Part shown: piece after piece, positions 25,901 through 60,800 of the stretch
Numbering within the stretch: the stretch's first letter is position 1
Layout of the letters: every line of letters begins with the position of its first letter
DNA from: Diadema antillarum
Taxonomy: Eukaryota
Assembly: GCF_040938485.1 (NCBI RefSeq)
Contig: NW_027270958.1
Span: 2,046,001-2,110,000, forward strand
DNA length: 64,000 bases
Reading direction: 5' to 3'
The notes under the pieces: model-generated
Told to the model about the DNA's origin: nothing
Seen by the model: the letters and a program-made list of their open reading frames with translations, nothing else
Database searches by the model: none
Translations under genes and position numbers: made by a program

Positions 25901-28900
25901 TTACAGTGCGTATCATAAGTAATTCTGTTTAAAAATACAATCCGACACGAAGGCTACGTTCATCATCAGATACATTCTTACTCCAAACACCAAGAGTAAA
26001 ACATGGGTATGGTGATCGTGCTTTTTCCGTTATGGGACCAAAATTGTGGAATCATTTACCTCTAGAGTTAAGGGAACTGTCATCTACAGAGCCATTCAAA
26101 TCCAAACTTAAAACTTATCTGTTCCTTTCATACTGAGGACTGTAATTGCTGTATGTCATTGATATTGGATCAATATTGTATTTTAATTGGTATATGTTGT
26201 ATTCTTTAATTGGTATATATTTGTTTTTGTTTACCGTTTTCTTCTTTGTTGAAATGTTTGAATACATGTATGTATATGCATGTGAATGATATCTTTTCAT
26301 TTTTGAAGCGCCATGAGCACTGAAAAGTGGACCTGTGCGCTATACAAGTAGCCACTATTGTTATTATTATTATTATTATAGATAAATGCATAATGGCACT
26401 TGAGTGTATAGGATATATGAACTTACGTGTATATTTGCTTTGTTCATTCTTGAAATCCAGAAGCAGCAATGTTTTTGTGGGTTTTTTTTTTTTGTTTAGT
26501 TTGTGTACCACAGTGCGTTCCCAAACGTTATTTTTTTCTTGCCACTCATAATGGTCAGCTTTATTTGAAAAGTATATTTAGGCAACATCCCACAATCTGT
26601 TCTCGTTTCCTTTAATCTTTGTGATCGTGATGTGTCGTTATAGTATGGTCTCAAGATGCTCATACGTGACTTCCGGCGCCCTTCATCTTCATACGAAGTG
26701 ATGATGGAGGCATGGAGCAAGAACATGACATCGACGCCGATTCCGCCAGCAGAAGTCCCCGGGTCGAACATCAAGTCCCGCCTGGATTCTTTCGGTGGGA
26801 TAAAGGTCAGGGTTTACGAACCAAAAGACAGGGTGCCTGGCGTACCCCTTCCCGCTTTCCTGTACCTACATGGAGGAGGGTTAGTCATCGGAACCATAGG
26901 TACATTGTAGGCCTAACTCTAACTGTTTTTAGAGATTAACACAACACTATGCTCCGGTTTATGCTTTGCAGAGGCTATCAGTTGAACTAGATTAAACAAA
27001 ACTGGTATGGAATCCGCCTTGCAAATGAAAACGAAATGCATGCACCACGGCTCTGTGTGTTAAGCTTCCTTACAAGTGAAAACAAGAGTATTATATTTAG
27101 TGTTTGCAGTCACTCGGGAAAATGTACAGGGCTTTCAACAGTGTGACACGCTCCGCTGAATCTGTACAGATATCCGTCATAGCCTTATTTCAGCCTAAAT
27201 TTAAAGCAGTCTCATAGCTTTTTTTGTGTGTGTCGGAAAATCGCTTCTCAATGAACCCATTGAAGACGAGTCACGAGTATACTCATGTAAAGATGTTAAT
27301 GGGAAATGCTTGTTGTATGGCAAAATCAGCCCGTCCTTAACGATTAAGCTAAAGAGAGAGAACGTACGTAACCACTATTCCTATTTAAATTTTGAGCATT
27401 TTATCTTTTTGAACTCCTTCCCGAGGTAAACCTTAATAGGCCTAAAGCACATTCGAGCACTTAGTGAACTGTATGGTATAAGAGTAAATACGTATAAATG
27501 CATATATGTGACTGAATTCAAGACTAAGCACAATAAATTCGTCATAACATTCAATGCGTGGATTCTTTTGACGTGCGTAGAATGCGATTGTGTCTCACTA
27601 CCATATGACTACGACATTCTTGTGCTCCTTATTTTTTATAGGGAGAGTTCACTTAGGCCCCAAATAATCAAACATTTAGCGTTTTATAGCACTCCTCTTT
27701 CTTCCTGTGCAATGTCTTCCAAATATTCTTCCAAATAATGAAACATTTCGTTTTATAGCACTCCTCTTTCTTCCTGTGCAATGTCTTCCAAATATTCTTC
27801 CAAATAATGAAACATTTCGTTTTATAGCACTCCTCTTTCTTCCTGTGCAATTTGAGATTACTCTGTCTAGCAAACGTTATTAACTATGTAATATGAGAGG
27901 TTTAATAGAATTGTTATGGGAACCTTTCATATAACTAAAGTAAATCCACCGTAATATCTTGACTACCTCTTATCTCTTCTTTTTCCCCCTCCAAATATAG
28001 ACTTTTATGACAGAGGTGTGCGCATGATCACCGAACGTCTCAACATCATTGGAATTGCTGTGTCGTAAGTGATCTCATTAGGAGTACGAAAGTATCAGAA
28101 TGCTCTCTCCACAATAAGTGAAACAAAAGACTTCCTTTTCAGCCTCAGGTTTAGGAGATGCTAACTTCTATACCCCAAGTATACAAGAATTGCTGCTCTA
28201 CCACACAAATTCCCTCACGTGATATGACTTCCAGTCTTGTAGAAGAAATATTACGGCAGAGAGAGTTTGAAGGCTGATGTGCAATTTGAATGTTAACTAC
28301 ATTGGATGATAATACTGTCTTACCGAAGTAGCTGGCATGTGCGATGCCATAATCACACAACTCTTACGATGAATTCATAAAAGATCAAATTAATGTTCAC
28401 ATCGTGCTTCGAGGAAAAATCTCCAAACTGTGTTCGAGATTTTGTATCGATGTGTTTTGCTCAACCACAGTCAGAGAAATTCAGAGGCAGTTGCCAGTAT
28501 GCATTACTCTACTCTTGCAAGAATTCAGCAACATGTGTAAAGCTCTTCAGTCGCTTTGGAGAAGTTCCACGCTTTATCATCAAGTGAATAATGGAAACAG
28601 ATCTAATGACATAAGTCAATTCAATTCAATTCAAAGTTTATTTCATTTTCCGACAAAACATAAGTTACACTTCTTTTGACAACAGAGAATAAGGTAAACA
28701 GAACATTATGTATTGAAAAGAATGTACAACATTGAGGACCTTATAGTAATTATACATTGTTGTGAAAAAAGAAACAGAAGTGATCGAAATGAGGTACATG
28801 TATAACTTTGCTTAAAGTGCGAAAAATGGAGAGACCCACTAAAAAGACAGAGCTTGTAGAATGTGGGCCCCTCTGGAAAAATAACATCAGTGGGAAGATA

Positions 28901-31900
28901 ATTGAAGCATCATAAATACAAAAGGAAAAAGAAAAGAAAAGAAGAAGAAGAAGTCTGGAAGCCCACTGAGAATTAGATTCACAGATAAATACATTTACTT
29001 TTATAGACGCGAACGAACATAGAAAACGACTAGACAACGAAACAACTACTGAAGAAAAGGTTGTACGGGACAAAACGGAATGGACAAGACTAACAAACAG
29101 AAGACAAAATAGCAAACGAAAATGCACAACAGAGACAGCGATCTCCGACAGAAGCATGTCAAGAGAAACAGATGATAGTTGTGGAGAAAAAAAGTGATAT
29201 TGTAACGCCAGAAAGGAGAAAAGCAAGGAAATGAGGGGACGTATGAACTGGAGTAAGACAGAAATTCAAGTCTTGACGCTTTGGGCGATAGCGTAGATGG
29301 CAGCAGACATCCACTAAAAAGAATACAATTTTTTCTTCAAAGAGGAAAAAAGGTAATTAAGTCAGTAAGTGAGAAAGAAGGCCAAACGGCTAGTTCAGTA
29401 CTGTAGAGTCATACGATTGCAATAGAAAGGACCTCAGTCTCCTCTTGAAAGAATATATAGATGGGGCGTTTTTTATATCATGATTCAAAGAATTCCAATA
29501 ATTTGGGCCTATATAAATAAGTGTATTTTTAGCAAGGATCGTGCGTAAAAGGGGTAAATGAAATTCATTGGAACGCCTAGTGGGATATTCATGAAATGAT
29601 TGGTTTTTGAGGAACATAGAATCAAAAATAGATGGAAGCAAATTGTTGCAATAATTGTACATAAATTGGCCTAAATTATACAAAAACAGATCTTTAATTT
29701 TCAAGAGCTTGCTAGAGGCAAACAACGTGTTTGTATGAGAACGTACAGGGGAATGGCAGATAACGCGGAGGGCTTTCTTTTGCAAGAGGGACACTCTTTC
29801 AAGTAAATTCTGATGCGTGTTGCCCCAAACTAAAACTCCATAATTCAAATGAGGCAATATTAACGACGAATATAACATAAGTAATACTTTTTGTGGAATA
29901 TAAAATTTCAATCTATTTATAACACCTGTATTACGCGATATTATGTTACAAATATTATCAACATGTGATTTCCAGGAAAGTTTATCATCCACAATGACCC
30001 CCAAGAATTTAATATTTGATACTCTTTGTAGATGAGAATCATCTAAAACTATATTTGTGTTTAAATTATCAACAGTATTACTAAAAATCATATATTTTGT
30101 TTTTTGAGCATTGAGTGATAACTTGTTAGCTCTGACCCAGTTGGTCACTTTTTGCAATTCAATATTGATTTTGTGAACGAGAAAATCAATATCGTTATGG
30201 GCGAAAAATACATTTGTATCATCTGCGAAATGAATAAAAGAGAGATCATCAGATACGCGACAAAAATCATTTATATAGATAATGAACAATAACGGCCCTA
30301 AAATACTTCCCTGTGGGACGCCACATTTAACTTCTCTGATAACTGAATCATTATTATTAATTGTAACAAATTGTTTTCTATCGACTAAATAACTCTTGAA
30401 CCACTCCAAGGCCTTCCCACGTACTCCATAATGCGATAACTTATAAAGTAAAATGTCATGATTGATGGTGTCGAAGGCCTTGGAGAAGTCCAAGAAAATA
30501 CTAACTAAATGAGAATGATTATCAATGGCATGAACTACTCTATCAACGAAATATAAAAGAGCATGCGAAGTACTATGTTTTTCACGAAAACCAAACTGAG
30601 AGTTCGTAAAAACTTCATGTACCTTCAAAAAATTGATCATTCTCTTATAAATAAGTTTTTCTAAAACCTTAGACAGTGAGGACAATAATGAAATTGGGCG
30701 ATAATTGCTGACTACAAATTTATCGCCTTTCTTAAATATTGGTATTACTTTAGCCAATTTCATTTTATCGGGAAACACACCGTTAAAAATTGACAAATTA
30801 AATATATGAACAAGTGGATCAGCAATCGAGGAAATAACACCCTTAAGTATAAAATTATCTATCTCATCATAACCAGAACTTCGTTTGTTCTCAAAAGAGG
30901 AAACTATATCAATAATTTCAAATCTATTAGTCGGTGTAAAAAATATGGAATCAGAGTTGCGCTGGCCTAAAAATTCAGTAAAATGAGTTTCTGTTGCAGG
31001 AATAGTTTGAGCATAGTTTTCACCTATTTCTGAAAAATAGGAATTAAAAATATTTGCAATATGAAGAGAATCATTAATCAATTCATCATTCATTTTAATT
31101 TTGTCAATGTCAGAGTTTTTACTCGGAACATTCATGGCCTGTTTTAGAACTTTCCAAGTATTTTTCATATCAAACCTATATCTCGAGAATTGCTTAAAGT
31201 AATATCTTTTCTTTTCAGAACGTAAAATCATTGTCAAAGTATTTTTGTATGATGTATATCTATTCTTCGATCGCTCAGTTTTTTCCAACTTATATTTATA
31301 ATACAAACGATTTTTCCTATTAATTGAACGAAGGATTGATTTTGAGATCCAAGGTAACCTGGGTGTTTTTTTGTAATCTGTTCTATTTTTTTGTTTTGGA
31401 ATTACATCATCTAAATGATGATTGAATATTTCCATAAAATTATGAAAAGATATATTGATATCATCGCTGCCAAACACTCCTGACCAGTCAGCATTCTCGA
31501 GAGCCACATCAAAACTAGCTAACTTTTCGGGTGAAACTCTACGACTAAACAAAGGAAATGAGGGAGGTTTAATATTAGATGAAGTTTTAAGAGTAAAATA
31601 AGTCATTATTGGAAAATGATCAGTCATATCTGAAATAATTAGGAAAGAGTCGGGGAGGGGTAGAATATTACAAAAAATGTTATCAATGAGGGTGGCAGAA
31701 CGATCTGTAATACGTGTGGGTTTGGAAATGAGCGGAAGAAAGGATGAGGATAAAAGTGTGTGAAGAAAATCACTAGAGATATTATCATGCTCAGATTTCA
31801 GCAAATCAATATTGAAATCGCCGAGTAAAAGGCAATCCTTATTTCGGAAAACGTGTGAATTTGCCAAATCTGAATAATAGGTTAAAAAATCATTAGCGTT

Positions 31901-40577: not shown

Positions 40578-41153
40578 CAAGGGTCACGTATTAATGAGCC
40601 ATAGTACTACATTTTAGTATTAGTGAATAGGGGGATATGGAGGAAAGGAGGGAAGGAAAACGATGAAACAAGAGAAGGAAAGAGGGATGGGTCTAATATT
40701 AACACAAGTGATAATGATAAGGTAGTGTATGCAGTAACAACACGGACAGATAATGACGTACTGCAGGGGGAGATTAACTTTAAATATTATTTTTAAATAC
40801 ACCCACATACACAGTACATTAAACATGTACGTTACTGTACAATAAAGTCAGACGTGATAGTTCCGTATTTAGCTTCTTGCAGAAAAGCGCTGTAGAGTTG
40901 TCCCTATATGTTGTCCCTATGTCCATTTTCGTGTGAATCAGTGCGTGAAACTAACAAATATCCAATTTCAGCCAATGGTGTATGAATTTACGAGTTATAC
41001 CCGGTCGTGTGGGTTAATTTGCATATCAACACGATCCGCTCTGTTCTAAAAATTTGGTGAGGACAAACCATAATATCAAGAAGCCTATCGTCAAAGGTAT
41101 AATGCTAAGCCGCACGGATTCATTGCGATAACACGCAGGCCACTGCGACACCG

Positions 41154-41490
41154 TGTGGAGCCGGGAAATGTGCAAACACCGGGAAATGTGCAAACGCCGG
41201 GAATTGTGCAAACGTCTCGCCGGGAAATGTGCAAACGCCGGGAAATGTGCAAACGTCTTGCCAGGAAATGTGCAAACGCCGGGAAATGTGCAAACTTCTC
41301 GCCGGGAAATGTGCAAATTTCATCAACGGGAAATGTGCAAACATGACGCCGGTAAATGTGCAAAAGTTCAATTTTGCCGGGAAATGTGCAAAACGTCGCC
41401 GGGAAATGTGCAAATCATTTACTTTAGTGATATTGTGTACAAAGATAGTAGATAAACTCCATATCAAAACTGCCCATGAACTTCCACCAT
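41154..41490 (+). repeat. Left outer TIR: about 12 copies of GGGAAATGTGCAAA
   Basis: Read directly from the sequence. Confidence 0.92.
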
Positions 41491-41705
41491 TTAGATTTTC
41501 TTAATGAAATCCTTGACAGATTTTCAACAAAATTGGCAGGTAGCACGATTATGGCGATGGGATCTCAATTTGTTTATATAGTAGCCCCCCCCCCCCCCCC
41601 CCGAAAAAGGGGAGGGGGGCTCAATTAAGTCCCAGAACTACGGTATTATCGAAATTCTTCTTGTATTATATAACCAAATAAGAATGAGCTAGGATGGTTC
41701 TTTAA

Positions 41706-42466
41706 CCCTAAAGGGGCCGGGATTTTTTGGCTATGCTGAGACCGGGAGGGGGGGGGGAATGGATTCCGCCCCCCCCCCCCCCACCATGAGATCTCGGCCA
41801 TTGGTGGTGCGATCGCGATGAAATTTGCATGCGTGAGACCCACGTCATAATCTACAAGATTGTGTCATAAGATTTTTTGAAACAATCAATTTCTAATTTT
41901 AATTAATTGATTATGCAAATTAAGCTCAAGATGATATTTTAGCCTAATTAAAAGCATTGAGAGTCTAATTTTTGATCTGTAAGTCTGTTTTTGCATATTC
42001 AACAATTGTACATCACAAAAACTTCCAAAACTCATTTCAATTCTTATGTATTTCATTGTTTTCAGAATTTCTTATGTATTTCCTTGTTTTTAAACTTTTG
42101 TTTTTTCTTTGTTTTTTCATTGGAAATTGTCACTGACCACTCTTCTACCATAACTAGCACAAAATTAATAAATGAAAGTGATTAATTGTAAAAATAATCA
42201 GGTTTTTATGACTTTCATAACAGAACATTGTTTTCCATAGGAAATGTACACAAAATCACAAAATTGTGCCCGTTTTGGGGCGACATTCCGTTACAAAAAT
42301 GGGCGTGGCTTCGCAAAAGTATGCGCGGACGTTGCAAATTTGGTCTCAAAAGTTGCGCGAGACTTGAACAAAGAAAGTCAAGAAGCCTCGCGACGAAGTC
42401 TTTTCGCGTTACAGATTTACAGCGCGAAACGTCGAGGGGGGGGGGGCGCCCCCGGCCCTTTTAGGG
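41706..42466. mobile_element. piggyBac-type MITE
   Basis: TTAA|CCCTAAAGGGGCCGGG...CCCGGCCCTTTTAGGG|TTAA. Confidence 0.85.
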
Positions 42467-43630
42467 TTAAAGATATTGATGACAGGAGTTCACGTTTAAT
42501 GGCAGATCCAGGGATGCAGGGCACGGGGCCATAAGTGGGGAGGAGTCTTCAAATTGAAGCCTCAGAGTCCCTAAACTAGTGCTATGAAGACATTAATGTT
42601 TGATTATGACGGATCCAGGGGTGTCCGGATCGCGGGGGAGGGGGTGAGGGGAGGAGAGGGATTTTCTACATTGTCAGTATCTTCTTGAAAAGTCTAGGAC
42701 AGATTTTCACGAAACTTGTCAGATAGCCTCATTACGGTGATATGATCTTAATGAATTGAAATTAGCCCCCAATCCTCCCCCCACCCCCGGCCGAAAAGGG
42801 GGGGGGGGGGGGGAGTTGAAGCCTCAGAGTCCCTAAACTCTGGATTTTTACAAATCTTTTTCTGTCGAACAACAAAAAAAAAAAAAGATAGAGCTAAGTT
42901 AGTGCCTCGTATGACTGAAATTTCATGCTTGATTATGGCAGATCCAGGGGTGCCCTGATTTGGGGTGGGGGAGGGGAAGTGATGGAGAGGAGGGGGATTG
43001 TCCACATTTACTGCATTTTCTTGATAAATCCCAAGAAGGATTTTCACCAAACTTGGCAGATGGCAGATACCATCTTTACGGTCATATGGTCTTATAATAT
43101 GGTAAAATGAGCTCCACCCCCTCCCACCGCCAAGGGGGGGGGGGGGGGGGGAAGCAGGAGTTGAAGTTTTAGGTCCCTAAATTCTGGAATCTGGAATCTT
43201 CTTCTGTTGAACCGAAGAATATGGAACTACGTTATATGAAGACACTACAGTTACTAAAATTTCAGGTTTGATTATGACGGGTCCAGGAGTGCGCTGATAA
43301 GGGGTGTGTGGGGGATTTTCCACATTTTCTGCATAGTCTTGTAAAATATATGACGGATTTTTACCAAACTTGGCAGATAGTATATTTATGGTGATTCGAT
43401 CTTAATTTTTTAAATTTAATTCCCCTCCCCCCGCCCCCCCCCCCCCCCGCCGACGAGGGGGGGGGGGGGGGGGGTTGAACCCTCAGAGTCCATATTCTCT
43501 TGATTTTTTTTTTACTTCTGTCGAACCGAAAAAGTTAGTGCTGTAAAGACATTAATGACCGAAATCTCATGTTTGATTATGGCGGGTCTAGGCGTGCTCT
43601 GATCGGGGGTAGGTGAGGGTGAGGGTGAGG

Positions 43631-43896
43631 GGGTGCTGTTCGTTATTCCGAAGGTTCGCTGTTCCGAAGGTACGTTATTCCAAAGGGTCGTTAATCCGAA
43701 ATACGCAAAGTCCCTATACCTAGAGGTTCGTTAATCCGAAAATGAAAAAGGGTGCGTTAATCCGAAAATTAGTGGCGTTATTCCGAAGACTGGTTGATCC
43801 GTAAATGAAATTCGGAAAAATGAACCTTCGGAATAACGAATCTTAGGAATAAAGAGCCTTCGGAATAACGAACCTTCGGAATAACGAGCTGTAACC
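43631..43896. mobile_element. MITE made of TTCGTTATTCCGAAGG repeats
   Basis: Inverted arrays of TTCGTTATTCCGAAGG / CCTTCGGAATAACGAA; related copy at 59121-59396. Confidence 0.7.
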
Positions 43897-44157
43897 AGGG
43901 GGAGGAGGGGGATTTTCAAAATTTTCTCCATCTTCTTGAAAAATCTATGACGAATTTTCACCAAACTTGCTCGTAGCATCTTTATGGTGATAGTACTGTA
44001 AATACAGTTAATGCATGATGTAAGCTCAAGTTTACAATGACAGATGAAGGGATGCCCAAAAAGGTGAGTGGGTAGGAAGGAGGCTTAATTTTTACATTTT
44101 TTGTCTTTTGCCTGAAAACTCAAGACGCATCCCTCGGATAATGAGATTATATATCAG

Positions 44158-44210
<53 letters not shown>

Positions 44211-44759
44211 CTATAAAAAATGATGGAGCTAATAGAGTGCCGGTGCCTGTTATGGGAAGTTAATTCATGAATATTAATGTTAAGTGCGGCGGAGGCGGAT
44301 TTGTCACATTCAGCTTCTTCTTGAAACCCTTATATAATAGATATTTGCCAAGCTTGAAACGTAGCGTAGCGTATTTATCTGGTGATATGACCTCAATTTG
44401 TCTAAATGAGCACTGCCCCAACCCCTAAATGGGAGGAGATGGAGACCCCCCCCCCACCACCTCATCTGCACCCCTTGAACTTGAAAGGGACCAACACGAG
44501 GGGGTGGGGTCGTTCGGGTGGAATTCAGAATTTTATTGAAAACCCTATACATATGAAAAAAAAACCGGAATACATACTTTTTAAAGAAATTTTCTATACA
44601 ACCAAGAGTAATAGAACACAATCTTATCACATTTTTAGAAGGTAGATCTATACTTTGATGAAATTTCACTTCTGCTTACTAAATGACGTGGGGGCTACCC
44701 TGGTCTTATCCCTAGCTTTGGGGAAGGGGAGCAACTTGGACTTGTTGCCCCTTCGAACA

Positions 44760-45041
44760 AAGTGGGATTCTATTACCCTAGAGATGCTACCTCCCACGTT
44801 CGGTGGAAATCCGTCAAAGATTTCTCAAGAGGATGCAGAATATGTGAAAATCTCCCTCCTCCCCCTCAACCCCCCCCCCCCCCGATAAAGACACCCCTCG
44901 ATCCGCCACAATCAAACGTGAAATAAAATTTCAGCCATTAATGTCTTCATAGCACTAACTAAGCTCTCTTTTCCGGTTTGACAGAAGAAGATAAAAATTG
45001 AGTTTAGCGACGCCGAGGCTTCAATCCCCCCCCCCCCTTAA

Positions 45042-45079
<38 letters not shown>

Positions 45080-46033
45080 GGAGGGGGGCTCATTGTAACA
45101 AATTAAGTGCATATCACCGTAAAGAGGCAATCTGCCAATTTTGGTGAAAATCTGTCTTATATAGATTTTTCAAGAAGATGCTGAAAATGTGGAAAATTCC
45201 TCTCTTTGCCCTCACCCCCGCGATCTGGAGACCCCTTGATCCGCGCCATAACCAAACATGAATTTTCATTCATTAATGCTGTGTCTTCATAGCACTAACT
45301 TAGCTCTATCTTTATCGGTTTGACAGAAGAAGATTAAATTCCAGAGTTTAGGGACGTTGAAGCTTCAACCCGCCGCAGTTCCCCCCCCCCCCCTTCGGCG
45401 GTTGGGGAAGGCTCATTTGAACAAATTAAGATCATAATTATTACCATAATCTTGCTATCTGTCAAGTTTGTGGAAAATCCCTCATAGATATTTCAAGAAG
45501 ATGCTATGTGGAATATCCCCCGCCACCCATCACCCTCCCCCCCCCCCTCCCCCCCGATCTGGGCACCCCTCGATCCGCCATAATCAAACATGAAATTTCA
45601 TTCATTAATCACGTTAATGTCTTCATAGCACTAACTTTAGCTCTATCTTTTCCGGTTTGACAGAAGAAGATTAAAATAAAAAAATCCAGATTTTTGGGAT
45701 GTTAAAAGTGAAGCTTTAATCCCCCCCCCCCTTCGGCGATGGGGGGGGGTCGCATTTTAACAAATCAAGATTATATTACGTTAAATATGACTGTATTTCA
45801 CAAGTTGGGTGAAAATCCGTCCTAGATTTTTCGAGAATGTGCTGAAAATGTGGAAAATCCCCCTCACCCCCCTCCCCCCCATCAGGGCACCCCTGGGTCC
45901 GCCAAAATCAAACATGAAATTTTAGTCATTAATGTCTTCATAGCACTCACTTAGCCCTTTCTTTTTCGGTTCGACAGATGAAGAAAGAAAATCAAGCGTT
46001 TATACATGGTATAGGGACTCTGAGGCTTCAACT
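44760..46033 (-). repeat. Right-arm array (reverse complement of the left-arm unit), resuming at 49351-49500 after the LINE
   Basis: Recurring GATCCGCCATAATCAAACATGAAATTT, CATTAATGTCTTCATAGCACTAACT and TTTAGGGAC..TGA(G/A)GCTTCAA. Confidence 0.82.
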
Positions 46034-49000
46034 ACAATACAAATGTATTGTTCACAACGACATTTGTAGAATGGACAACACTGTTGAATCTCTTTTTGTA
46101 GAAATTTCTATCCCAGGATGTAGGAATGTGTTATTGGGTATAATATACAGACCTGGTAAAAAACCCAGTTTTTAGAAATAAGGATTGCTTTCTACTTGGT
46201 GATTATAATATTGATTTGCTGAAATCTGGAAATGATTGTATCTCAAGCGAGTTTCTTGAGACATTTTTGTCTTCATCCTTTTTGCCACTCATTACTAAAC
46301 CGACTCGCGTCACGGATCACTCTGCTACTTTAATTGACAATCTGTTTTGCAATATCTTACCTCTTCCCGATTCTTTTATAATTCTCTCAGATGTGACCGA
46401 CCATTTCCCAATCATGACTCATTTTACTTTGAAAACTTTGGCTAATGATGCTAAACCTTCGGCTCCTTTATGCAAACGTAGAGTCTCATGTGAAAAGTTA
46501 GCCAGTTTTGATGCCGCTCTTGATAATGCTGATTGGTCACGAGTTTATGAAAATGATGAAGTTAATCTGTCTTTTGATAATTTTATGGAAATATTTAATT
46601 CTCTTTTGGATGATATTATTCCAAAGCAAAAAAGTAAAAAGGATTATAAAAAGACGCCTAGGTTACCGTGGATTTCAAAATCAATTCTTCGTTCAATTAA
46701 TAGAAAAAAATCGATTGTATTATAAATATAAAATGGAAAAAACTGAACGATCAAAGAACAAATATACATTATATAAAAACACATTAACTAGGATTTTACG
46801 TTTGGAAAAGAAAAGGTATTATTCTCAGCAGTTGTTGAAATTTAAGTTTGATATTAAAAATACTTGGAAAGTTTTAAAGCAGGCAATGAATATTCCGAAC
46901 AAAAAAGCAGAAATAGATGAAATAAAGTGGGATGATGAAATAATTGATGACCCTGTTGATATTGCAAATGTTTTTAATTTTTATTTTTCAAAAATAGGTG
47001 AAACGCTTGCTCATGGTATTCCGGCTACAGAACAGAATTTTACTGAATTCTTAGGCCAGTGTAACCCCAACTCTATTTTTTTAACTCCAACAAACAGATA
47101 TGAGATTATCGATATTGTATCCTCTTTAAAAAAAACAAACGTAGCTCCGGTTATGATGATATAGATAATTGTATCCTTAAGGGTGTTATATCATCAGTCG
47201 CACATCCCTTGGCTCACATTTTTAATCTGTCAATTTCTAATGGTATGTTTCCTGATAAACTGAAATTGGCTAAAGTAATTCCAATATTTAAAAAAGGTAA
47301 TAATCTGGATGTCAGTAATTATCGTCCAATCTCTTTATTATCTTCATTATCGAAAGTTTTAGAAAAAATAATATACACCAGAATTATCAAATTTTTAATG
47401 TGCACAAAATATTCACAAAATTCCCAGTTTGGTTTCCGAGAAAAACATAGTACCATCCATGCAGTTCTTCATTTTATTGATAAAGTCGTTAACGCAACTG
47501 ACAATCATTCCCATTTAATTAGTATATTCTTGGACTTCTCCAAGGCCTTCGATACAATTAATCACGACATTTTACTCCACAAGTTATCGCACTACTGAAT
47601 ACGTGGGAAGGCCTTGGAGTGGTTCAAGACTTATTTAGCTGACAGAAAACAGTTTGTTTCAATTAAAGATAATAATTCAGTTATAAGAGATGTAAAGTGT
47701 GGTGTTCCACAGGGAAGTCTTTTAGGGCCGCTGCTATTCATAATATATATCAATGATTTTTCCTCTGTTTCAGAGGTACTTTCCTTTATACACTATGCTG
47801 ATGACACCAGTGTTTTTCTTGCCCATAACGATATCGATGTTCTTGTTCAACAAGCTAATACAGAATTGAAAAAAGTGACCAACTGGGTCAGAGCTAACAA
47901 GTTGTCATTGAATGTTAAAAAAACAAAATATATGCTTTTCAGCAATACTGTTGATTCTTTGAATTCAGAAATAGTTCTGGATGATTGTAATTTAGAAAGT
48001 GTGTCATATTTCAAATTTCTTGGTATTTTTGTAGATAATAAACTTTCTAGGAAAATACATATTGATCATATTTGCAAAATCATCTCTCGAAATATAGGTG
48101 TTATGAACAGACTAAAATTTTATAATTATTCCTGAAAAGACATTACTTGTGTTATACTCCTCTTTGATACTCCCTTACCTTCATTATGGAATTTTAGCTT
48201 GGGGCAATACACATCAGACGCTGCTGAATAGAGTCTTATTATTGCAAAAGAAAGCCCTCCGTATCATTTCCAATTCTCCCACTCGTTCACATACAAATGT
48301 ATTGTTTAACTGTAATAAGCTACTAAAAATTAACGAATTATTTTTATACAACTTAGGCCAATTTATGTATATGTATGATAACAGTTTTACTGCCACCTAT
48401 CTTTGGTTCTATGTTCCAAAAAAAATCAATCATTCCATAATCACCCCGCCCGACGCTCTAACGAGTTTCATTTACCACTTCTTCGAACGATTTTAGCAAA
48501 GAATACACTTATTTACACTGGACCTAATTATTGGAATTCCCTGAACCACGATATAAAATCTGCTCCCTCTATATACTCCTTTAAAAGGAGATTGAAGTTT
48601 TTTCTTTTGCAATCCTATAATGACGACCCCCTGAATCAGATTAGTTCATAGGCTTATTTGGTTTCCCGTCCGCAAAATCTTTATCGCCGTTTTTTTCATT
48701 ATTGTTACCTTTGCCTTAGCTTTGATTATGATAAGATCCTCTTTAACTTATACCTCGCAGTTGAAGGGTTTGTTGTATATTCTTCTTTTCTTCTTCTTCT
48801 CTTTCTTCCTCTAACCTCCGATGATCGTTGTCTCTGTTGCTTACTCCTGTCTATTTTGTTACCTCTTCGTCGCGCTGTAGTCTTGTTTCCTGTCGTGTCG
48901 TCGAGTCAGTTTTCTTCCCTATAAGTAGTCTTGTTGCTGTCCCAGTCTTGTCTCATGCTCATTATTTCGTTTGTTATTGTTTTGTGTGTAACTGTTTGTC

Positions 49001-49350
49001 CGTCTGTCTCTTAGTGGGCTGCTAAACTTTTTATGCCAAACTTTTCGTGCTGCTTTGTTGCTATATTTAGTCAAATTTTGCATCGAGTTTTTAATACAAG
49101 AGGGGCCCACACTCTACAAGCATTGTCTTTTTAGTGGGTCCCTCCGTTTTTTCACACAGTGCATATTGACAATTCTTTCATTTTCGTTACTTCTGCAACA
49201 ATTGCAATGTATTGATACTATTAGTTTTTCTCATTATTGTTGGTTTCTTTGTACGAATTTACATACATTTTATCTGTCACTCAAGAAAGTGAGATTTATG
49301 TGTGTATGATTTTATTGTGGAAAAAACGAATAAATTCGAACTTGAACTTG
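46034..49350 (+). pseudogene. 5'-truncated, disrupted CR1/L2-group LINE related to 28617-32519
   Basis: Fragments VESLFVEISIPGC, ATLIDNLF, SNYRPISLL, GVPQGSLLGPLLF, YADDT and SFKRRLKFFLL are broken by frameshifts and an in-frame TGA at about 47596. AATAAA plus (CTTGAA)n tail; AACT at both junctions. Confidence 0.92.
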
Positions 49351-49506
49351 AACTCTCCCCCCCCCCCCCCTCCTTAGGGCTGGTGTCGGGGGGGGGGGGG
49401 CTCATTTTGACAAATTACGATCATATCACCATTAAGATGCTATCTGCCAGATCTGGTGAAAAATCGTTGTAGGGTTTGCAAGAAAATGCTGAAAATGTAA
49501 TAAAAA

Positions 49507-50822
49507 ACTAGAAATGTCGCTATGGCGACTGATGCCTCCGCCATAATGCATGATTCTCCCAATAGGTGTATAGTACAATGTCTTCACAATGTGTGTTGAC
49601 AGTTTCACATAACTGGCAAAATACTGAAATGACAGGTTTGTCAGAAATATCTTGAATGTTCACTTTTCCTTGAACTGGGTTTGCTATAATTGTCTAAAGA
49701 GTGCAGGTACACATATTTAGGGAATTGAGAATTTTTACTTGACTTCTGACGGCCCCTTATGCATTGAGTAATTTCCAAGGTATGAAAAAAAGAATGTAAT
49801 TACAGTACAAAATAGTCGTTGTTTTTTTTTTTTTGGGGGGGGGGCATTGAAACCTGGCCCTTGATCCTTAACCTTTGACCTTTGACGTTCTGGCTGGAAA
49901 TTTCCCGGAGAATCTCCATCAGGTAATGCACGTATATATTAAGTTTTAAAACTAATAATGCAAGCATTGCATATACTAGTATATGAGGGAAATAGTATAA
50001 TTTTGAGGAGTTGACCTTGACCTTTGACCCCCTGACTATTGACCCACGACCCCTGAATTCCCTAGATAATCCCTGCCAGTCAGTACATGCGTATGCACCA
50101 AGTTCCATGAAGATACATTGAACCATTTGCGAGAAAAGTGATATTGCAACATTTTCACCTAATCTTTGACCTTTTGACCTTTGACCTTATGACAAGAAAC
50201 TCTCTTTGGAGAATCTTTACGCAGTAGCGCATGTTTACACTAAGTTTCAAGAAAATACCTTTGGGCATTGATATGGGGGAAATAGCAACATTTATACCAT
50301 TCGACCTTGACCTTTTGACCTTTGACCTCTTGCCAATGTCACTAAAATCTACTCAACTAATTGTCCCATCATACATCATCCTTGCACCAAGTTTGGTGAA
50401 AGCTGCTGCATCCAGTTTTGAGTTATCACGTAAACAGATAAATTTTAGGATTTGACCTTGATCTTTGACCTTTGACCTCTGTCCGATTTCACTAGAAAAC
50501 CTATCAAGTAATTGCCCCATCATACATCATCCTCCGACAAAGTTTGGTGAGATTTGCTCGATCCAGTCTTGAGTTATCGCGTAAACGGACACAATTTCAT
50601 GATTTGACCTTGACCTTTGACCTCTGACCTTAGGCAGATTTCACCCAAAATCTTATCAAATAATTGCCCTATCATACTTTATACTTGGACCAGGTTTGTT
50701 AAATTTCCAGTCAATATTACTCAAGTTATCGCGTAAACGAAAGCGGACGGACGTACGTTCGGACGGACGGACAACCCGAAAACATAATGCCTCCGGCACC
50801 ACTTCGTGGCCGAGGCATAAAA
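49507..50822. mobile_element. Second Helentron-associated element (HINE-like)
   Basis: Terminal GTCGC-TATG-GCGAC inverted repeat and ATGCCTC subTIR; TGACCTTTGACC-rich core; (GGAC)n; hairpin ATGCCTCCGGC...GCCGAGGCAT; A-run flanks. Confidence 0.78.
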
Positions 50823-50852
50823 AGACAGATGGTCGCTAAGACAGGTGGTAAA

Positions 50853-51155
50853 GATGGTAATGGTTCGTGCGCAGCTTTGATTGAGAGTTTCTCTTCCATC
50901 TCTACATAATATAGGTGAAATGAATGGTTTGCACATTCCCGGCGACGTTTTGCACATTTCCCGGCAAAATTGATCATTTGCACATTTCCCGGCGTCACGT
51001 TTGCACATTTCCCCGTTGATGAAATTTAGAGATTTGCACATTTCCCGGCAAGACGTTTGCACATTTCCCGGCGTTTGCACATTTCCCGGCGAGACGTTTG
51101 CACATTTCCAGGCGTTTGCACATTTCCCGGCGTTTGCACATTTCCCGGCTCCACA
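50853..51155 (-). repeat. Right outer TIR: TTTGCACATTTCCC array
   Basis: Reverse complement of 41154-41490, near-identical at the terminus and decaying inward. Confidence 0.92.
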
Positions 51156-54100
51156 CACCGTCCCTTTCATTTGGATGCTAAACATAAAAATGAATACATT
51201 TATCCTTATTCATCAAATGATTTGTGTTTAATGACCACTTATGACCAGTGCTACTAGACAAGCCCGATTCTTCTAATATGGGCAAAGTCGTGACATAATA
51301 AGCATCCCATTGATATTTTCTCGTGTGTGAACACGGACAGTCACATTCTGAATGGTGAGGTGTACGTGTCTGACTATTGACATTGATACTAGCTTCCCAC
51401 TTTCGTGCGATTCGTTACAAAGGCCACCAATAGCCATTCGTATACATGTAGTTGATTGTGGAAGTTTGTTTACTTTATTGTGATAAGTTGATCCTCTTTC
51501 TGGATGATATTTTTGAGCTTTTTCTCTAGAGGGGTTTATTTCTCATGAGTAACTGTACGATTCTGCCATTTCGATTTCTGGTAAAGACGATTAATTCACT
51601 TCTTTTGTTCTCTCGGCCTTTTAGCTAAAGTAAGTTCACAGTGAGGATATGCTCTCTTTAATCGTGGAATGAGGCGCACACATGGTTTGTCCGGTATACT
51701 GCGCGCGAGAACTCGAAACAGATCGTAAGACTCCGTGAAAAACAAAACAAAGCAAAACAAAAGCAAAAGCTAAAGCAAAAAAAAACCCAAACATTTCACT
51801 ACTCCCTATCTACTCGTATCTACTCTTACCAACTCATGTCATCACGTGAGTCATTCTTGTCAGGTTGTGAGCAATGGTACACCCACCAGAGGGTCACTGA
51901 TCGTGACAAATCGTAGATGATCGCGGCGCATCTCAACAGAGCACTGTCACAACGATTTTGAAGCACGATTTGATGCGATCTGTTGAGATCTAAAGTGATG
52001 ATCACGATTCACGTTTAACAGGTTTAATCGTGTTGCTCGTGGAAAATTTCTGAACTGTCCAAAACTATCCTACGCTCAAAACAATAGACATGAAAGAAAG
52101 ACATCAAGTTCTTACAAGATCTGACTGTCTGATAGGATCAACACGATTAATCCAAGATAAAGACCACGATTTCAGTCGTGGCGCGAAACATAATAGTGGG
52201 AAAATAGCATTAACCTTCACCTTTGACAGAAATCCACCCAATGTAGACCGTAAAAGCAGGTAGATATAGAGTTGGAAGAACGTGATTGTAAATGAGAACT
52301 AACTAGACTGCTGGAGGAGAGAAGAAAGAAGTGAGAGAGCGTAGAGATGAATTGGGGACAGTTGAACGTCCACGACAGAATTTAGGAAATAACACATCAG
52401 GTACCGGTTAGCAGTTACAGAGTAAAACGGTCTATTTATATAAATTTTGTAATAACTCTGGATTAAAATAAGCATTTGAGATGAAATTTTCTAAAACATT
52501 TCTTTTATGTATATATTTTCATAATACATAACAAGCACAAGCCATTCGCTTTACAAACACAAAAGGCAGAGATATAAATACACCAAACTTTCAGCCCGTT
52601 TTTCTACAAAGTAACATTTCTCAAGATAGACCCTTTTACCATGTGACGGCCGCGGTACCGCTGTACTGATACTCATTCTACGGGTTATATTTCGAGACAC
52701 ACAAATATCATCAGAATCACAAACATAATTTTCTACACATCTGACATTATTATACCGAGATGATAAGCTGAGCCCAGCGGCAAAATTCACAGAAAAAAAA
52801 GTACAATCGTCAACAGACGTTTATATACCATAGACAAGGGACGTAGAGGAATATCATAACCAATGTAACATGCCTTAGAGAACAACAGCAATAACAACAG
52901 TAACAACAAAATAAGCAGAGTCAATTCTAAATTCATTTGAAGAGAAAAAAATCTTGTGAAAAATGCAATATCATCCTGACTGGAATAACGCTTATTAATA
53001 TCAAATAAAATCATATAGAGAAAAAAAAACAGTATGACTTCCTAATAGGGCCTATATATACACGCCTACTTTTTTCCAGGAAAATTGTACCCCGGCACAA
53101 TCCTAAAACAAAGGCTATTTGATCCCTGATGCCATTTTTATTCCACATTCACTATGACACTTTCATTTCAATAAAGCGAGCATAATGATACATGTAATAC
53201 GAAACTGAACAATAGCGATCCAAGCTAACCAGTGTGATATAACCTTGAGGATTTGACATTGTGAGTTATCATAAATCTAGGCCTTGTTTGCATTTTTCTT
53301 TTTTGACATGTGTCAAGTACCGTCTGACGTCACAGGAACAACAATAACCAAGCAAAGTTCCTCGACTCGTCTGCATGCTCTGTTCATGACCACTTTCAAA
53401 GTTCAGTGTACACAAGATACGTTGATAAAAATTTGCTTGGTCTTTCTATTTGCGAGAGCACCTTTTGAGTCTTGCTTCATGAACTTCAGACTAAACTATT
53501 CTAACACACACACACATGCACATACACACACACACACACACACCCTGAATAATGCAAAAGTCTAAATCAAGAGTATCAAATCTGCAATTGAATAGCTTGC
53601 TGCCAAAAGGCGCTCAGTCCATTGAAAATTATGGATTTAGGACCTTTAGGAAACAAGCTCTTCAATTATTATTGTTTGCAATGTCATTCAGGTAGCACCA
53701 AAACGATATTTGACTTCACAGCAAGATAACACATTTTACGTTACTATTTTGACATAAAGATAGGTACATGAATCTTAAATACATTTCACATAGAGGTTTT
53801 TTGGCATGTTATTGGAAGAGACACGAATCTAAATAAAGTTTCTTTGATGTACACACAGTTGTGTACACACAGTTGTACCTAATTTTTCATTCATAACTGC
53901 GCATTATCATTTATTATTCATATACATTTTACGCATTCATATTATATACAAACATTCACACAAGTTCACACACACACACACATACTCTTGTACACACACT
54001 CACATACACACACATACACTCATACAAACACACATACACATATAAATCCGTGTCAAGCAACTGTTTCCAATCTTCCACATATACATACTGAGGTGAAATG

Positions 54101-57876: not shown

Positions 57877-60800
57877 TTAATTTCCACGGTGACGGGCTAT
57901 TAATACCGCCAAAACGGTGAGCAGTCCGGATAAAATATCAGCCACAGCGCATAGCGTGAAGGGGAGGTTGTATGAGCCACTGGCGTCGAAAACTGCACCT
58001 AGATTTTCGAAGAAGATGAAACAATGGAATTAAACGAAATAAGGGTTAATATACATGTCCTCCTCTAATGTCATAATGTCATTCCTCATCTCCATGTTAT
58101 CCATGCTTCTCCTTTTAATGACAACATAATGATGATATCATTAGGATTAATTCATTACACATATAGCTGTCATGAATGGGGCAATTGCGATGATTCAATC
58201 ATGTTAACCCACTACGAAAAGTTTTATATTATACTGATACGTCATAGATTTCAGCCTTATAGATTACAGCTTGGTATTTCAGAAGTATAATTCTATGAAA
58301 TTCGGAATTCCATGTCATAACATGTAATTCTGCATGCATTATCCGATTTATAAGATGAAAGCAAAACTCTACAAGGGAATGTCCCCCCCCCCCGAAAAAA
58401 AAAACACGACAGCAACAACAAACCAACAACAAATGGTAAATGATACGAGGCGGTTTTTGTTTGTTTGTTTGTTGTTATGTTTTCTTTACTCACTTGGTTT
58501 TTTAAGGGAGTTATGTGAATTATACGTTCACTGCAAAAAGTCCGGTGTTAAATATGACACACCGAGCTGGTGTTAAATTTCCGGTGCTCATTCATGGTGT
58601 TAGATTAACACCTCCGGTGTCATTTCAAAATTTAAAATTGTTTTTTTAATAGTTTCTTACTTACTGCACTTCTTGTTAATTTTGAACTTCAACAAGACGA
58701 TAAAGAATTTTCCGATAAAGTACTTGATTTTTGAAAAAAATGTGTAAACACATTTACACCACAGTAACACCAGTTGGGGTGGTCCCCTATTGAAGCTGGA
58801 CGGGTGTTATACCATTGAAATTAACACCATCAATATCAAATCAACACCATGCGGTGTCATTATTGAATTAATTCTAGCGCAGTGTCCAAAATATCACCAG
58901 CCACAGTGTCAAATTAACACCACGAAGTGCCAGCGAACACTTTTTAACACCGTCACAATACATTTTCAACACCTGTGGGTGTGGTCCTCTATTGAAGTTT
59001 GATCGGTGTTAGATTTATCACCCATGGTGTTAAATCTAACACCGATGTTTTTACAGTGTTGTAACGTGATTGCTATTCATACTGCATTATCATATCATGT
59101 TTCATATCACCCCTTTGATGGGTGATGTTCGTTACTTCAAAGGTAATTCTTCATTCGGAAACCCACACATTCTCTATACATGCACGTTCGTAAATCCGAA
59201 AATGATAAAGGGTTCGTTATTACGAACAGTATTTTGTTGCGTTATTTTGAAGGTTCGTTAGTCCGAAAATGAAATGAGGTTTGTTATTTCGAAGGTTCGG
59301 GAAAAAAAAAAAACCTTTTTAGGTTGTTGTTTTTTTTTCATTCTTGGAATAACAAACCTTTGAAATAATGTACCTTCGAAATGACGAAGTGTAACCTTAG
59401 CTAGAATCATGAAAGGTGAATGTAACCTGGATTCCTGTTACCATCTAATCCTTAACAGGGAATACATGTATGTCATATTCACCTGTCATAAATCCGCCGA
59501 GAATTTCCCCTGATCCGGCAGCCAAGTAAAATATGGCTAAAGCCTTTATCTCGTATTCTTCAGACACGAAGCTCTTCGCTAGCACACTGTTCAAGACGGT
59601 GGATGCCCCGATCGTCAAGCCACTTGCTACCGACAGCATGGCTAGTCCTGCGAAAGATTCTACCACAATGTTCAACAAAAAGGCCGAGGCCGAGCACAGG
59701 TGAAGCACACAAAATGTCAAATAATCTGGAAATAATTGTGCGCGGGAAAACGGGCCGATGAACAATCTTCCCAAGATATTTGCACTCCCGCCAAAAGTCG
59801 CAAGCAGCACAGCATGCTGTAGAACAATGCCTTTCGACAGCGCATTGGGGATGACAAAAATAATCCATGAGCTGTACGGAACGAAGCCGAAAATGAAGGT
59901 GATTCCCAACACTATAAACGCTGGAAACTGACGAAATAGATCTAGGTGAATGAATGACTGTATCCATTCCACCAATGTTGCCATGCATCTCGTCTCACTA
60001 GGCCGGTTGTCCTCGAGGATATTTGCGGGATGAGTGAAACTGTCATCGGCACTTCCATTTTGATCCGAATCCTAGTTTGAAATCGAAAAGAAGATACACG
60101 TGTATGAGTTGAAAGTTTAGTGTGCTTTACGACATTCACGAAAAGTTTGGGCTTATATTTTTGATAAGCTGTTTTGCTTACATTATGAAAATTATTGATA
60201 TGTTGTTCTTTGAGAGAACACAGTAGTCACATGCTGTTGTTGTTGACGTCACGCCTCTCTGCCGAACTTCCGGATGTATATCAAATAACCAATTTTGTTT
60301 TTAAATGTATATCAGGAATCGACAGTAGCATTTTTTTCTTCAGCTGGTCCGTTTTGACCTATAAAATCTTTGAATTTGAAATTTTGGTGGACAGAAAAGA
60401 AATGTATTGGCCCGAAATAAGAGGAAACATAACTTTAAAAAAAAAATCTAGATGTTTGATCAGGCCATCAAAAGATAACCTCCCAGAAAATTCGGTGGCT
60501 CGACATCAATTTTGGTAGCCCACCAGGGCTATCGCTTCACCGCTAAATGTTGAACCCATTGATATTCATGTAATGAGTGTAGATACGGTTATAGGTTAGC
60601 AAAACTGCAGCAGATGATTAGGCTAGTAATGTATTAAAGGCTCTCACCTGTGGATTCTCCTCCACAAGTGGCCTAAATAGGGCGCAACAAGGAAGGAGGT
60701 GTAGTTGAAAACCGCCCAGGATGAGCATAGCTCCCCTCCATCCGTAGGTTGAACGGAGCTCCTCGGCTGCTACGGGGAGAGTCATCATGCCAAGACCTCC

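What the first reader, a model, noticed from the sequence alone, without database searches (positions are those of the whole stretch)
41154..51155. 10-kb foldback transposon with TG...CA ends, 5-bp TSD and modular inverted arms
Seen: an exact CACCG TSD and TGTGGAG...CTCCACA termini. The outer arms carry about 12 GGGAAATGTGCAAA words. The inner arms are ~300-bp units running forward (41.5-44.1 kb) and reverse (44.8-46.0 and 49.35-49.5 kb) around a short A-rich centre. Removing the nested piggyBac MITE, small MITE, LINE and HINE leaves a ~4.3-kb non-coding palindrome. Known: Foldback-type elements have long modular TIRs and promote rearrangements; TGT...ACA ends with 4-5-bp TSDs are typical of integrase-like Ginger transposons. 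Inference: possibly an undescribed Ginger-mobilised foldback family, sitting between paralogs 3 and 4.
Basis: partly seen in the sequence, partly recalled or inferred. Interest (0 to 1): 0.7.

Follow-up and report, generated by a model that had tools for sequence, protein, structure and literature searches.

The report
Gene-less long-armed jumping DNA family
This 10-kb block is one copy of a jumping-DNA family with several hundred copies in a sea-urchin genome; it has no enzyme gene of its own and carries three or four other mobile elements as passengers, and although it is well bounded and was mobile fairly recently, it is an ordinary kind of element whose mobilising enzyme I could not find.

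Summary
Window 41154-51155 starts TGTGGAG and ends CTCCACA, and is flanked by an exact 5-bp duplication, CACCG. Its outer arms are 328 and 293 bp, with 12 and 10 GGGAAATGTGCAAA words. The inner arms are ~330-bp units in opposite orientation.

It is one copy of a real family. The terminal 24-mer occurs 559 times in the 1.75-Gb two-haplotype assembly and 0 times in the control. Termini come mostly in convergent pairs 2.5-7 kb apart. Twelve of 15 full copies have perfect, GC-rich 5-bp duplications. One copy has an exact empty site on the other haplotig.

The family has no conserved reading frame, so it is non-autonomous. The nested piggyBac-type MITE, a 1.3-kb abundant repeat and a truncated LINE are real passengers, but they travel with the element. 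A second 10-kb copy with the same LINE lies at another locus with its own duplication, AGGAC.

The arms are ~98% conserved between subfamilies, against 86-88% for the interior.

The Ginger (integrase-type) idea fits the TGT...ACA ends and the 5-bp duplication, but no transposase was found, so it remains an inference. Transib and classical foldback membership each fail one defining feature.

Another note of this scan (s1-208713) reports a gene-less transposon with a 5-bp duplication elsewhere in this genome. I did not check whether it is the same family.

The parts
41149..41153 (.). Left copy of the 5-bp target-site duplication, CACCG
   Evidence: The 5-bp length is confirmed by 12 of 15 other copies and by an empty site.
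41154..41481 (+). Left outer arm (terminal inverted repeat). It starts TGTGGAG and carries 12 GGGAAATGTGCAAA words, 18-28 bp apart
   Evidence: It is 97-100% identical in the 40 best genome hits and ~98% conserved between subfamilies.
41482..41703 (+). Sub-arm segment with a partial inner unit (about 41499-41619) that pairs with 49360-49462
41704..42465 (.). Nested 762-bp piggyBac-type MITE (CCC..GGG ends, flanked by TTAA). It is inherited by the whole 6.7-kb subfamily and absent from the 5.8-kb subfamily
42466..43633 (+). Left inner arm: about 3.2 tandem units of ~330 bp, each with a C-run/G-run hairpin motif
43634..43993 (.). Small hairpin piece made of 16-bp repeats (43631-43700 against 43827-43896), then a partial inner unit (43900-43992).
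   Evidence: A 72% match elsewhere in the window at 59127-59275.
43994..44770 (.). Non-coding middle segment with an A45 run at 44162-44206. It is missing from the two short deletion copies examined (L035, L036), so it is not needed for movement
44771..46033 (-). Right inner arm, first part: ~330-bp units in the opposite orientation
46034..49346 (+). Nested 5'-truncated LINE (reverse-transcriptase frames broken, (GAACTT)n tail). It is 77.5% like the LINE at 29411-31852 of the window, and is shared with the copy at C2371
49347..49504 (-). Right inner arm, remainder of the unit split by the LINE
49505..50825 (.). Nested ~1.32-kb repeat that is abundant on its own in the genome. It has 151-bp internal tandem repeats (50299-50739) and a hairpin plus A-rich end. 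Present in every family copy. The left edge is approximate
   Evidence: 5,133 first-look candidates, many on contigs with no family termini. Also.
50863..51155 (-). Right outer arm, ending CTCCACA, with 10 inverted copies of the 14-bp word
51156..51160 (.). Right copy of the 5-bp target-site duplication, CACCG

Best explanation
The block is one copy of a non-autonomous, foldback-like DNA transposon family of the sea urchin genome. The organism is Diadema antillarum according to earlier notes of this scan. Shown: the family has several hundred termini, mostly in convergent pairs. It inserts with a 5-bp staggered cut into short GC-rich pentamers. It was mobile recently enough for one insertion to be missing from the other haplotig. 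It keeps moving while carrying other transposons as passengers, as the 6.7-kb and 10-kb composite forms show. It has no gene of its own. Inferred mechanism: a DDE-type transposase supplied in trans binds the 10-12 copies of the 14-bp word GGGAAATGTGCAAA in each arm, brings the two arms together, cuts at the invariant TG/CA ends and integrates the excised DNA. Copies with damaged arms are no longer amplified, which would explain why the arms stay ~98% alike while the interior has drifted to 86-88%. The TGTGG...CCACA ends plus a 5-bp duplication are the signature of integrase-like enzymes (Ginger2/TDD type). I consider that the single most likely class, at about 0.35-0.4, but it is unproven. The overall confidence given refers to 'mobile non-autonomous transposon moved in trans', not to the Ginger assignment.
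For: The terminal 24-mer occurs 263 times forward and 296 times reverse, and 0 times in the control. Among the first 100 termini there are 30 convergent pairs, with length modes at 5.8 and 6.7 kb; the chance of such pairing is about 0.3% per site. All 15 full copies have identical TGTGGAG...CTCCACA ends, and 12 of 15 have perfect 5-bp duplications, all at different sites. Empty site: for the copy at C494:528261-532169, both flanks lie next to each other on C418 with a 5-bp overlap (388150-388154) at 96% flank identity. Uninterrupted copies of the host repeat in public runs read straight through a single GACCT. Target of 28 independent sites: 73% GC in the 5 bp against 43% in the flanks; position 2 is a purine in 26 of 28, position 3 is G or C in 25 of 28. 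There is no conserved ORF and no Pfam hit in the core. Composite mobility: C2371:24919-35001 matches the window copy at 97.6% including the LINE, has different flanks, and has AGGAC on both sides. Arms are 96-98% conserved against 86-88% for the interior in the old subfamily. Related arms with TGTRGAGC ends and arrays of the AAATGTGCAAA core occur in two other public assemblies. Ginger and TDD termini and duplication lengths are from PMC2836005 and PMC10045372.
Against: No transposase was linked to these ends. None of the 150 best rve hits or the 104 hAT-dimerisation hits lies inside a TIR pair on contigs C2-C193. Known metazoan Ginger2 families make 4-bp duplications at AT-rich sites, and Ginger1 makes 4-bp CCGG/CCGT duplications (PMC2836005). 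The GC-rich 5-bp target looks more like Transib. The 14-bp words are no better conserved than the spacers between them (0.926 against 0.919), so their role as binding sites is inferred from their arrangement only. The copies examined were chosen by similarity to the left arm, which inflates the left-arm conservation; the right arm was not used for selection. Three of 15 copies lack matching duplications.
Confidence: 0.85

Rival explanations
1. The family belongs to a DNA-transposon lineage that has not yet been described. Its enzyme would be neither Ginger-like, Transib, hAT nor MULE, and the TG..CA ends plus 5-bp duplication would be convergent.
For: No known superfamily passes all the features tested: Ginger fails on duplication length or target composition, Transib on the termini, and foldback/MULE on duplication length (PMC2836005, PMC1131882, PMC4079207). 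Related arms occur in other assemblies with no Pfam-annotated neighbour genes on contigs of 4-30 kb.
Against: The absence of a transposase is weak evidence here, because only the best-scoring fraction of genome hits could be seen and no more DNA could be fetched. TG..CA ends with 4-6-bp duplications are a strong hallmark of the integrase class.
Confidence: 0.3
2. A Transib-type transposase moves the family. Transib is the classic eukaryotic superfamily with 5-bp duplications at GC-rich targets, and it is common in sea urchins.
For: The duplication is 5 bp and 73% GC in a ~40% GC genome. Transib elements show the same preference and occur in sea urchin, for example with the duplication CGGCG (PMC1131882). 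Earlier notes of this scan report Transib elements in this genome.
Against: [quoted passage not shown] Here all 15 copies begin TGT. The arms are ~300 bp with 10-12 subterminal repeats, unlike the 38-bp Transib ends.
Confidence: 0.1
3. It is a hAT-group element of the kind with 5-bp duplications ('hAT5'; this group is recalled from my own knowledge of Repbase and RepeatMasker classes and was not checked), moved by a BED-finger hAT transposase that binds the subterminal repeats.
For: Many short subterminal repeats are typical of hAT elements such as Ac/Ds (my own knowledge). The duplication is 5 bp.
Against: The third base of hAT ends is always G (PMC1131882); here it is T. None of the 104 hAT-dimerisation-domain hits lies within a TIR pair on C2-C193.
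Confidence: 0.1
4. It is a classical Foldback/TU-type element (Mutator- or P-related), as described in sea urchins and flies.
For: The build is the same: an outer domain of short tandem repeats, an inner domain of longer tandem repeats and a non-coding middle. [quoted passage not shown]
Against: The duplication is 5 bp in 12 of 15 copies and at the empty site. Tetris and FB elements make 8-10 bp (PMC4079207), sea-urchin TU elements about 8 bp and Galileo 7 bp (both from memory, not checked).
Confidence: 0.05

Closest known systems
[quoted passage not shown]
   Same: TGTNR...YNACA termini. A 5-bp duplication, as in TDD-4/5. Terminal inverted repeats of tens to a few hundred bp (PMC2836005, PMC10045372).
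   Different: No integrase-type gene was found for this family. Metazoan Ginger2 makes 4-bp duplications at AT-rich RTATAY sites, whereas here the duplication is 5 bp and GC-rich. Here there are 10-12 subterminal repeats per arm and a foldback-like interior.
Ginger1 DNA transposons
   Same: TGTNR ends, GC-rich target and TIRs of 40-270 bp (PMC2836005).
   Different: Ginger1 makes a strict 4-bp CCGG or CCGT duplication. Here the duplication is 5 bp, with only a loose G-R-S-Y-C preference.
Transib transposons
   Same: A 5-bp duplication, a strong preference for GC-rich targets, and presence in sea urchins (PMC1131882).
   Different: Transib ends are CAC...GTG with an RSS-like heptamer and nonamer. 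Here the ends are TGT...ACA, with ~300-bp arms full of 14-bp repeats.
Foldback elements (Drosophila FB and Tetris, sea-urchin TU, Galileo)
   Same: Long modular inverted arms built of tandem sub-repeats, a non-coding middle, many deletion derivatives and a tendency to collect insertions (PMC4079207; TU and Galileo details from memory).
   Different: Those make 7-10-bp duplications and are tied to Mutator or P transposases. Here the duplication is 5 bp with TG..CA ends, and the inner arms are only 66-71% complementary.

Membership tests
Non-autonomous TIR (cut-and-paste class) DNA transposon | Terminal inverted repeats, a target-site duplication of fixed length, many copies at unrelated sites, and an empty site | tested here: met
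   empty site.
Non-autonomous TIR (cut-and-paste class) DNA transposon | No transposase gene in the element | tested here: met
   No ORF is conserved between copies outside the repeat-derived frames of the arms. No Pfam hit in the core ORFs.
Ginger (Ginger1, Ginger2/TDD) | Termini TGTNR...YNACA | tested here: met
   TGTGG...CCACA in 15 of 15 full copies and in 559 genome termini.
Ginger (Ginger1, Ginger2/TDD) | Duplication of 4 bp (Ginger1 CCGG/CCGT; metazoan Ginger2 at AT-rich sites) or 5 bp (TDD-4/5) | tested here: inconclusive
   It is 5 bp, which fits only the TDD type. The target is 73% GC, unlike metazoan Ginger2 (PMC2836005).
Ginger (Ginger1, Ginger2/TDD) | Moved by an integrase-like DDE transposase (H2C2 zinc finger plus rve core) | tested here: inconclusive
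   None of the 150 best rve hits (of 2,416 candidates) falls inside a TIR pair on C2-C193. The long copies could not be fetched.
Transib | 5-bp duplication at GC-rich sites | tested here: met
   PMC1131882.
Transib | CAC...GTG termini with an RSS-like heptamer and nonamer | tested here: not met
   All copies begin TGTGGAG. CAC is invariant in Transib (PMC1131882).
Foldback / TU / FB-type elements | Long inverted arms made of tandem sub-repeats around a non-coding middle | tested here: met
   69% of the left half of the 4.6-kb core has an inverted counterpart.
Foldback / TU / FB-type elements | Duplication of 7-10 bp (Mutator- or P-type) | tested here: not met
   It is 5 bp. 8-10 bp is reported for Tetris and FB (PMC4079207).
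piggyBac-type MITE (the nested piece 41704-42465) | CCC...GGG ends and a TTAA target | tested here: met

The most novel reading that the evidence does not exclude
The family, together with the related arms found in two other public assemblies (same TGTRGAGC end, same AAATGTGCAAA core at 18-bp spacing), marks an undescribed lineage of animal DNA transposons. That lineage would be either a Ginger/TDD-like integrase clade that makes 5-bp duplications at GC-rich sites, or a new superfamily. In either case foldback-like architecture would have arisen outside the Mutator and P superfamilies.
Probability: 0.3. Interest if true: 0.55.

Novelty: new member of a known kind. Interest (0 to 1): 0.3.

Why it matters
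It adds a well-documented family to the sea-urchin repeat catalogue. The family has several hundred termini and at least one insertion that is present on one haplotig only. Its signature is unusual: TG..CA ends and a 5-bp GC-rich duplication combined with a foldback-like build, which in the papers I could read is tied to Mutator- or P-type elements. It shows that such an element can keep moving while growing from about 4.6 kb to 10 kb by picking up other transposons. The strong conservation of the arms against a drifting interior marks out what its enzyme probably needs. If the enzyme proves to be integrase-like, this would be a useful natural substrate for studying Ginger-type transposition in an animal. 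For annotating the locus, it means the 10 kb between the two esterase paralogs is repeat DNA, not regulatory or coding sequence.

Tried and rejected
1. Finding the autonomous partner.
- ORF scans of 20 ten-kb copies gave only nested LINE reverse transcriptases.
- Genome scans with Pfam rve and the hAT dimerisation domain gave no hit inside the TIR pairs listed on C2-C193.
I did not try to read them by other means.

2. Using the reading frame that runs through the arm as a protein probe.
- This found 16 arm-derived ORFs in ENA assemblies.
- One 1-kb contig (L051) gave a related arm but no gene.

3. Other searches that gave nothing.
- Exact look-up of six element ORFs in the protein collection.
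- A metagenome scan for the terminal 24-mer.
- Rfam and tRNA scans; only sub-threshold chance hits.

4. A test of whether the 14-bp words are better conserved than their spacers showed no difference.

5. Laying public contigs on a 3.9-kb copy was uninformative about that allele, because its flanks are themselves a high-copy repeat. It only confirmed the uninterrupted target sequence.

6. The 1980s papers on sea-urchin TU elements could not be reached, so their details are quoted from memory.

7. Rejected readings.
- Segmental duplication or a chance palindrome: ruled out by the copy number, the site-specific duplications and the empty site.
- The inner ~330-bp unit as an independent genome-wide repeat: the 40 best hits listed lie at coordinates consistent with family copies.
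Full report
**Observation**

CACCG sits at 41149-41153 and again at 51156-51160. The element starts TGTGGAG at 41154 and ends CTCCACA at 51155.

The outer arms are 41154-41481 and 50863-51155. They are 97% complementary over the first 124 nt and 85% over about 295 nt. The word GGGAAATGTGCAAA occurs 12 times in the left arm (9 exact, 3 with one mismatch). It occurs 10 times, inverted, in the right arm (8 exact, one with one mismatch, one with two). Spacing is 18-33 bp, mostly 18 or 23. The word occurs nowhere else in the 64-kb window.

Inside the arms, units of about 330 bp run in one orientation at 42592-43619. They run in the other orientation at 44771-46033 and 49347-49504, around a middle segment with an A45 run. 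Each unit has a C-run/G-run motif. The units are 70-78% alike, whether compared within an arm or between arms.

**It is a family, not a single oddity**

The left arm and the right arm each give about 1,000 first-look candidates in the window's own genome. The 40 scored hits are 97-100% identical.

The terminal 24-mer, allowing one mismatch, occurs 263 times forward and 296 times in reverse. The control pattern occurs 0 times. Among the first 100 termini listed, 60 form 30 convergent pairs. The chance of a convergent partner within 20 kb is about 0.3% per site. Pair lengths cluster at about 5.8 kb and 6.7 kb. There are also shorter deletion forms of 2.5-4.7 kb and a few longer pairs.

The assembly is 1.75 Gb. 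A congener's genome is 886 Mb (PMC11066563), and several loci appear twice at 96-100% identity. So both haplotypes seem to be present, and copy numbers per haploid genome are roughly half these figures.

**The 5-bp duplication is real**

Fifteen complete copies were cut out. All have the same TGTGGAG...CTCCACA ends. Twelve are flanked by a perfect 5-bp repeat that differs from copy to copy.

The copy at C494:528261-532169 has the duplication GACCT. Its left flank matches contig C418 down to position 388150, and its right flank matches from 388154, on the same strand, at 96% identity. The two flanks therefore abut with one copy of the 5 bp. That is an exact empty site on the other haplotig. It shows both the duplication length and fairly recent movement.

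That copy had landed in a high-copy ~355-bp repeat. Other copies of that repeat, in the genome and in public runs, read straight through a single GACCT.

Twenty-eight independent insertion sites give a 73% GC pentamer within flanks of 43% GC. Position 2 is a purine in 26 of 28. Position 3 is G or C in 25 of 28. Position 5 is never A. This is a loose G-R-S-Y-C preference.

**Anatomy and history**

Comparison with other copies splits the 10 kb as follows.
- The family backbone is 41154-46033 plus 49347-51155, 6,689 bp in all.
- An older subfamily of ~5.8 kb lacks 41704-42465. That piece is a 762-bp piggyBac-type MITE with CCC..GGG ends and a TTAA target. The whole 6.7-kb subfamily inherited it.
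- The stretch from about 49505 to 50825 is a separate repeat of ~1.32 kb. It gives 5,133 first-look candidates. Many near-full-length copies lie on contigs with no family termini. It also has a much higher word depth in public runs than the arms do. Every family copy carries it, so it entered the ancestor of the family.
- 46034-49346 is a 5'-truncated LINE with broken reverse-transcriptase frames. It is 77.5% like the large LINE at 28.6-38.4 kb of the window.
- 43631-43896 is a small hairpin piece of 16-bp repeats.

The LINE is not private to this locus. C2371:24919-35001 matches the window copy at 97.6% across the LINE. It has unrelated flanks and carries AGGAC on both sides. The 10-kb composite has therefore itself transposed.

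The copy on C142 has a 100% identical 1.5-kb flank. It is the other haplotig or an assembly duplicate of the window locus.

Without the three large passengers the core is 4,606 bp. In the core, 69% of the left half has an inverted counterpart. Identity is 85% in the outer arms but only 66-71% in the inner arms.

**Coding capacity**

No reading frame is conserved between copies, except the frames that run through the stop-free repeats of the arms. The longest core ORFs have no Pfam match. The only large ORFs in long copies are nested LINE reverse transcriptases. Rfam and tRNA scans gave nothing above threshold. The family is non-autonomous.

**Signs of function**

Non-allelic copies are 89-98% alike overall. 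Between the window copy and the old subfamily, identity by segment is:
- left arm, 97.9%
- right arm, 96.2%
- inner units, 86-88%
- middle segment, 88%
- the 1.32-kb passenger, 88%

The copies were chosen by similarity to the left arm, so only the right-arm figure is unbiased. Even so, it points to selection for intact arms, as expected if the arms are what the transposase recognises. Within the arms, the 14-bp words are no better conserved than the spacers. Their role as binding sites therefore rests on their number, spacing and inverted arrangement only.

**Relatives elsewhere**

I used the reading frame through the arm as a protein probe.
- It found 16 arm-derived ORFs in public assemblies. 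Several read ...CGAVKCAKTHKCAN..., preceded by different residues in each. This back-translates to the same TGTGGAGC end followed by AAATGTGCAAA words 18 bp apart.
None has a neighbour with a Pfam hit.
- One 1-kb contig from another ENA sample (L051) carries an arm 85% like this one. It starts TGTAGAGCC, has GGGATATGTGCAAA words, and is followed by different inner tandem repeats.
- The end sequence and the word are thus shared by a wider group of elements with interchangeable interiors.

**Which enzyme?**

This could not be settled. By signature:
- Ginger-class elements share the TGTNR ends. A 5-bp duplication is reported only for TDD-4/5. Metazoan Ginger2 makes 4-bp duplications at AT-rich sites. 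Ginger1 makes 4-bp CCGG/CCGT duplications (PMC2836005, PMC10045372).
- GingerRoot/IS3EU makes 6-bp duplications (PMC6839031).
- Transib shares the GC-rich 5-bp duplication, but its ends are invariably CAC (PMC1131882).
- Foldback elements share the architecture but make 8-10-bp duplications (PMC4079207).
- hAT ends always have G at the third position (PMC1131882). Here it is T.

None of the 150 best rve hits or the 104 hAT-dimerisation hits lies inside a listed TIR pair on contigs C2-C193. This is weak negative evidence, because only part of each list is visible.

The 16-kb and 32-kb pairs that might hold a gene could therefore not be read, and I did not try to read them another way.

My estimates are:
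- integrase-like (Ginger/TDD-type), about 0.35-0.4
- an undescribed type, about 0.3
- Transib, about 0.1
- hAT with 5-bp duplications, about 0.1
- Mutator or P type, about 0.05

**Context**

**Verdict**

It is a gene-less, foldback-like DNA transposon family that has carried passengers while moving. The Ginger attribution is a reasonable but untested inference. It is a new, apparently unnamed family of a known kind. The unusual end-and-duplication signature is worth settling once the long copies can be read.

Noticed in passing
window 49505-50825: A ~1.32-kb repeat with 151-bp internal tandem repeats and a hairpin plus A-rich end. It is far more abundant in the genome than the host family: 5,133 first-look candidates, and many near-full-length copies at 88-92% on contigs without family termini. 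Its type (SINE- or LINE-tail-like?) was not determined, and its left edge is approximate.
   Followed up: partly
window 42592-43619, 44771-46033 and 49347-49504: Each ~330-bp inner unit has a run of 10-20 C, a few bases, then a run of 10-20 G, which could form a hairpin, G-quadruplex or i-motif. Near one end, five of the seven units carry a degenerate AAATGTGGA string resembling the core of the 14-bp arm word, but in the opposite orientation to the outer arm on the same side.
   Followed up: no
L051:52-330 (ENA ERZ17174867) and proteins P0001-P0016 (those looked up mostly from ENA ERZ26222911): Related arms in other public assemblies share the TGTRGAGC end and AAATGTGCAAA-type words at 18-bp spacing but have different interiors. 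The organisms are unknown.
   Followed up: partly
L032 and L033 (C823 and C2, an allelic pair); L040 (C729): Three of 15 full copies lack matching 5-bp duplications: TACCC against TATGT, and GACCC against CGGTC. This could reflect recombination between copies, an adjacent insertion or a deletion.
   Followed up: no
L007:1308-1500 and L036:4110-4275 (C494): The 3.9-kb copy sits inside a ~355-bp repeat with well over 2,000 first-look candidates in the genome, at 91-98% identity. This is a young high-copy SINE- or MITE-like family.
   Followed up: no
L045:7217-7744; window 25376-25908 and 58529-59059: A ~530-bp repeat is nested in another family copy and is also present twice in the window, at 87-94% identity. 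It is another mobile short element.
   Followed up: no
L042:8244-9566: A 441-aa open frame with no Pfam match lies 2.2 kb beyond the right end of a family copy. It was not investigated.
   Followed up: no
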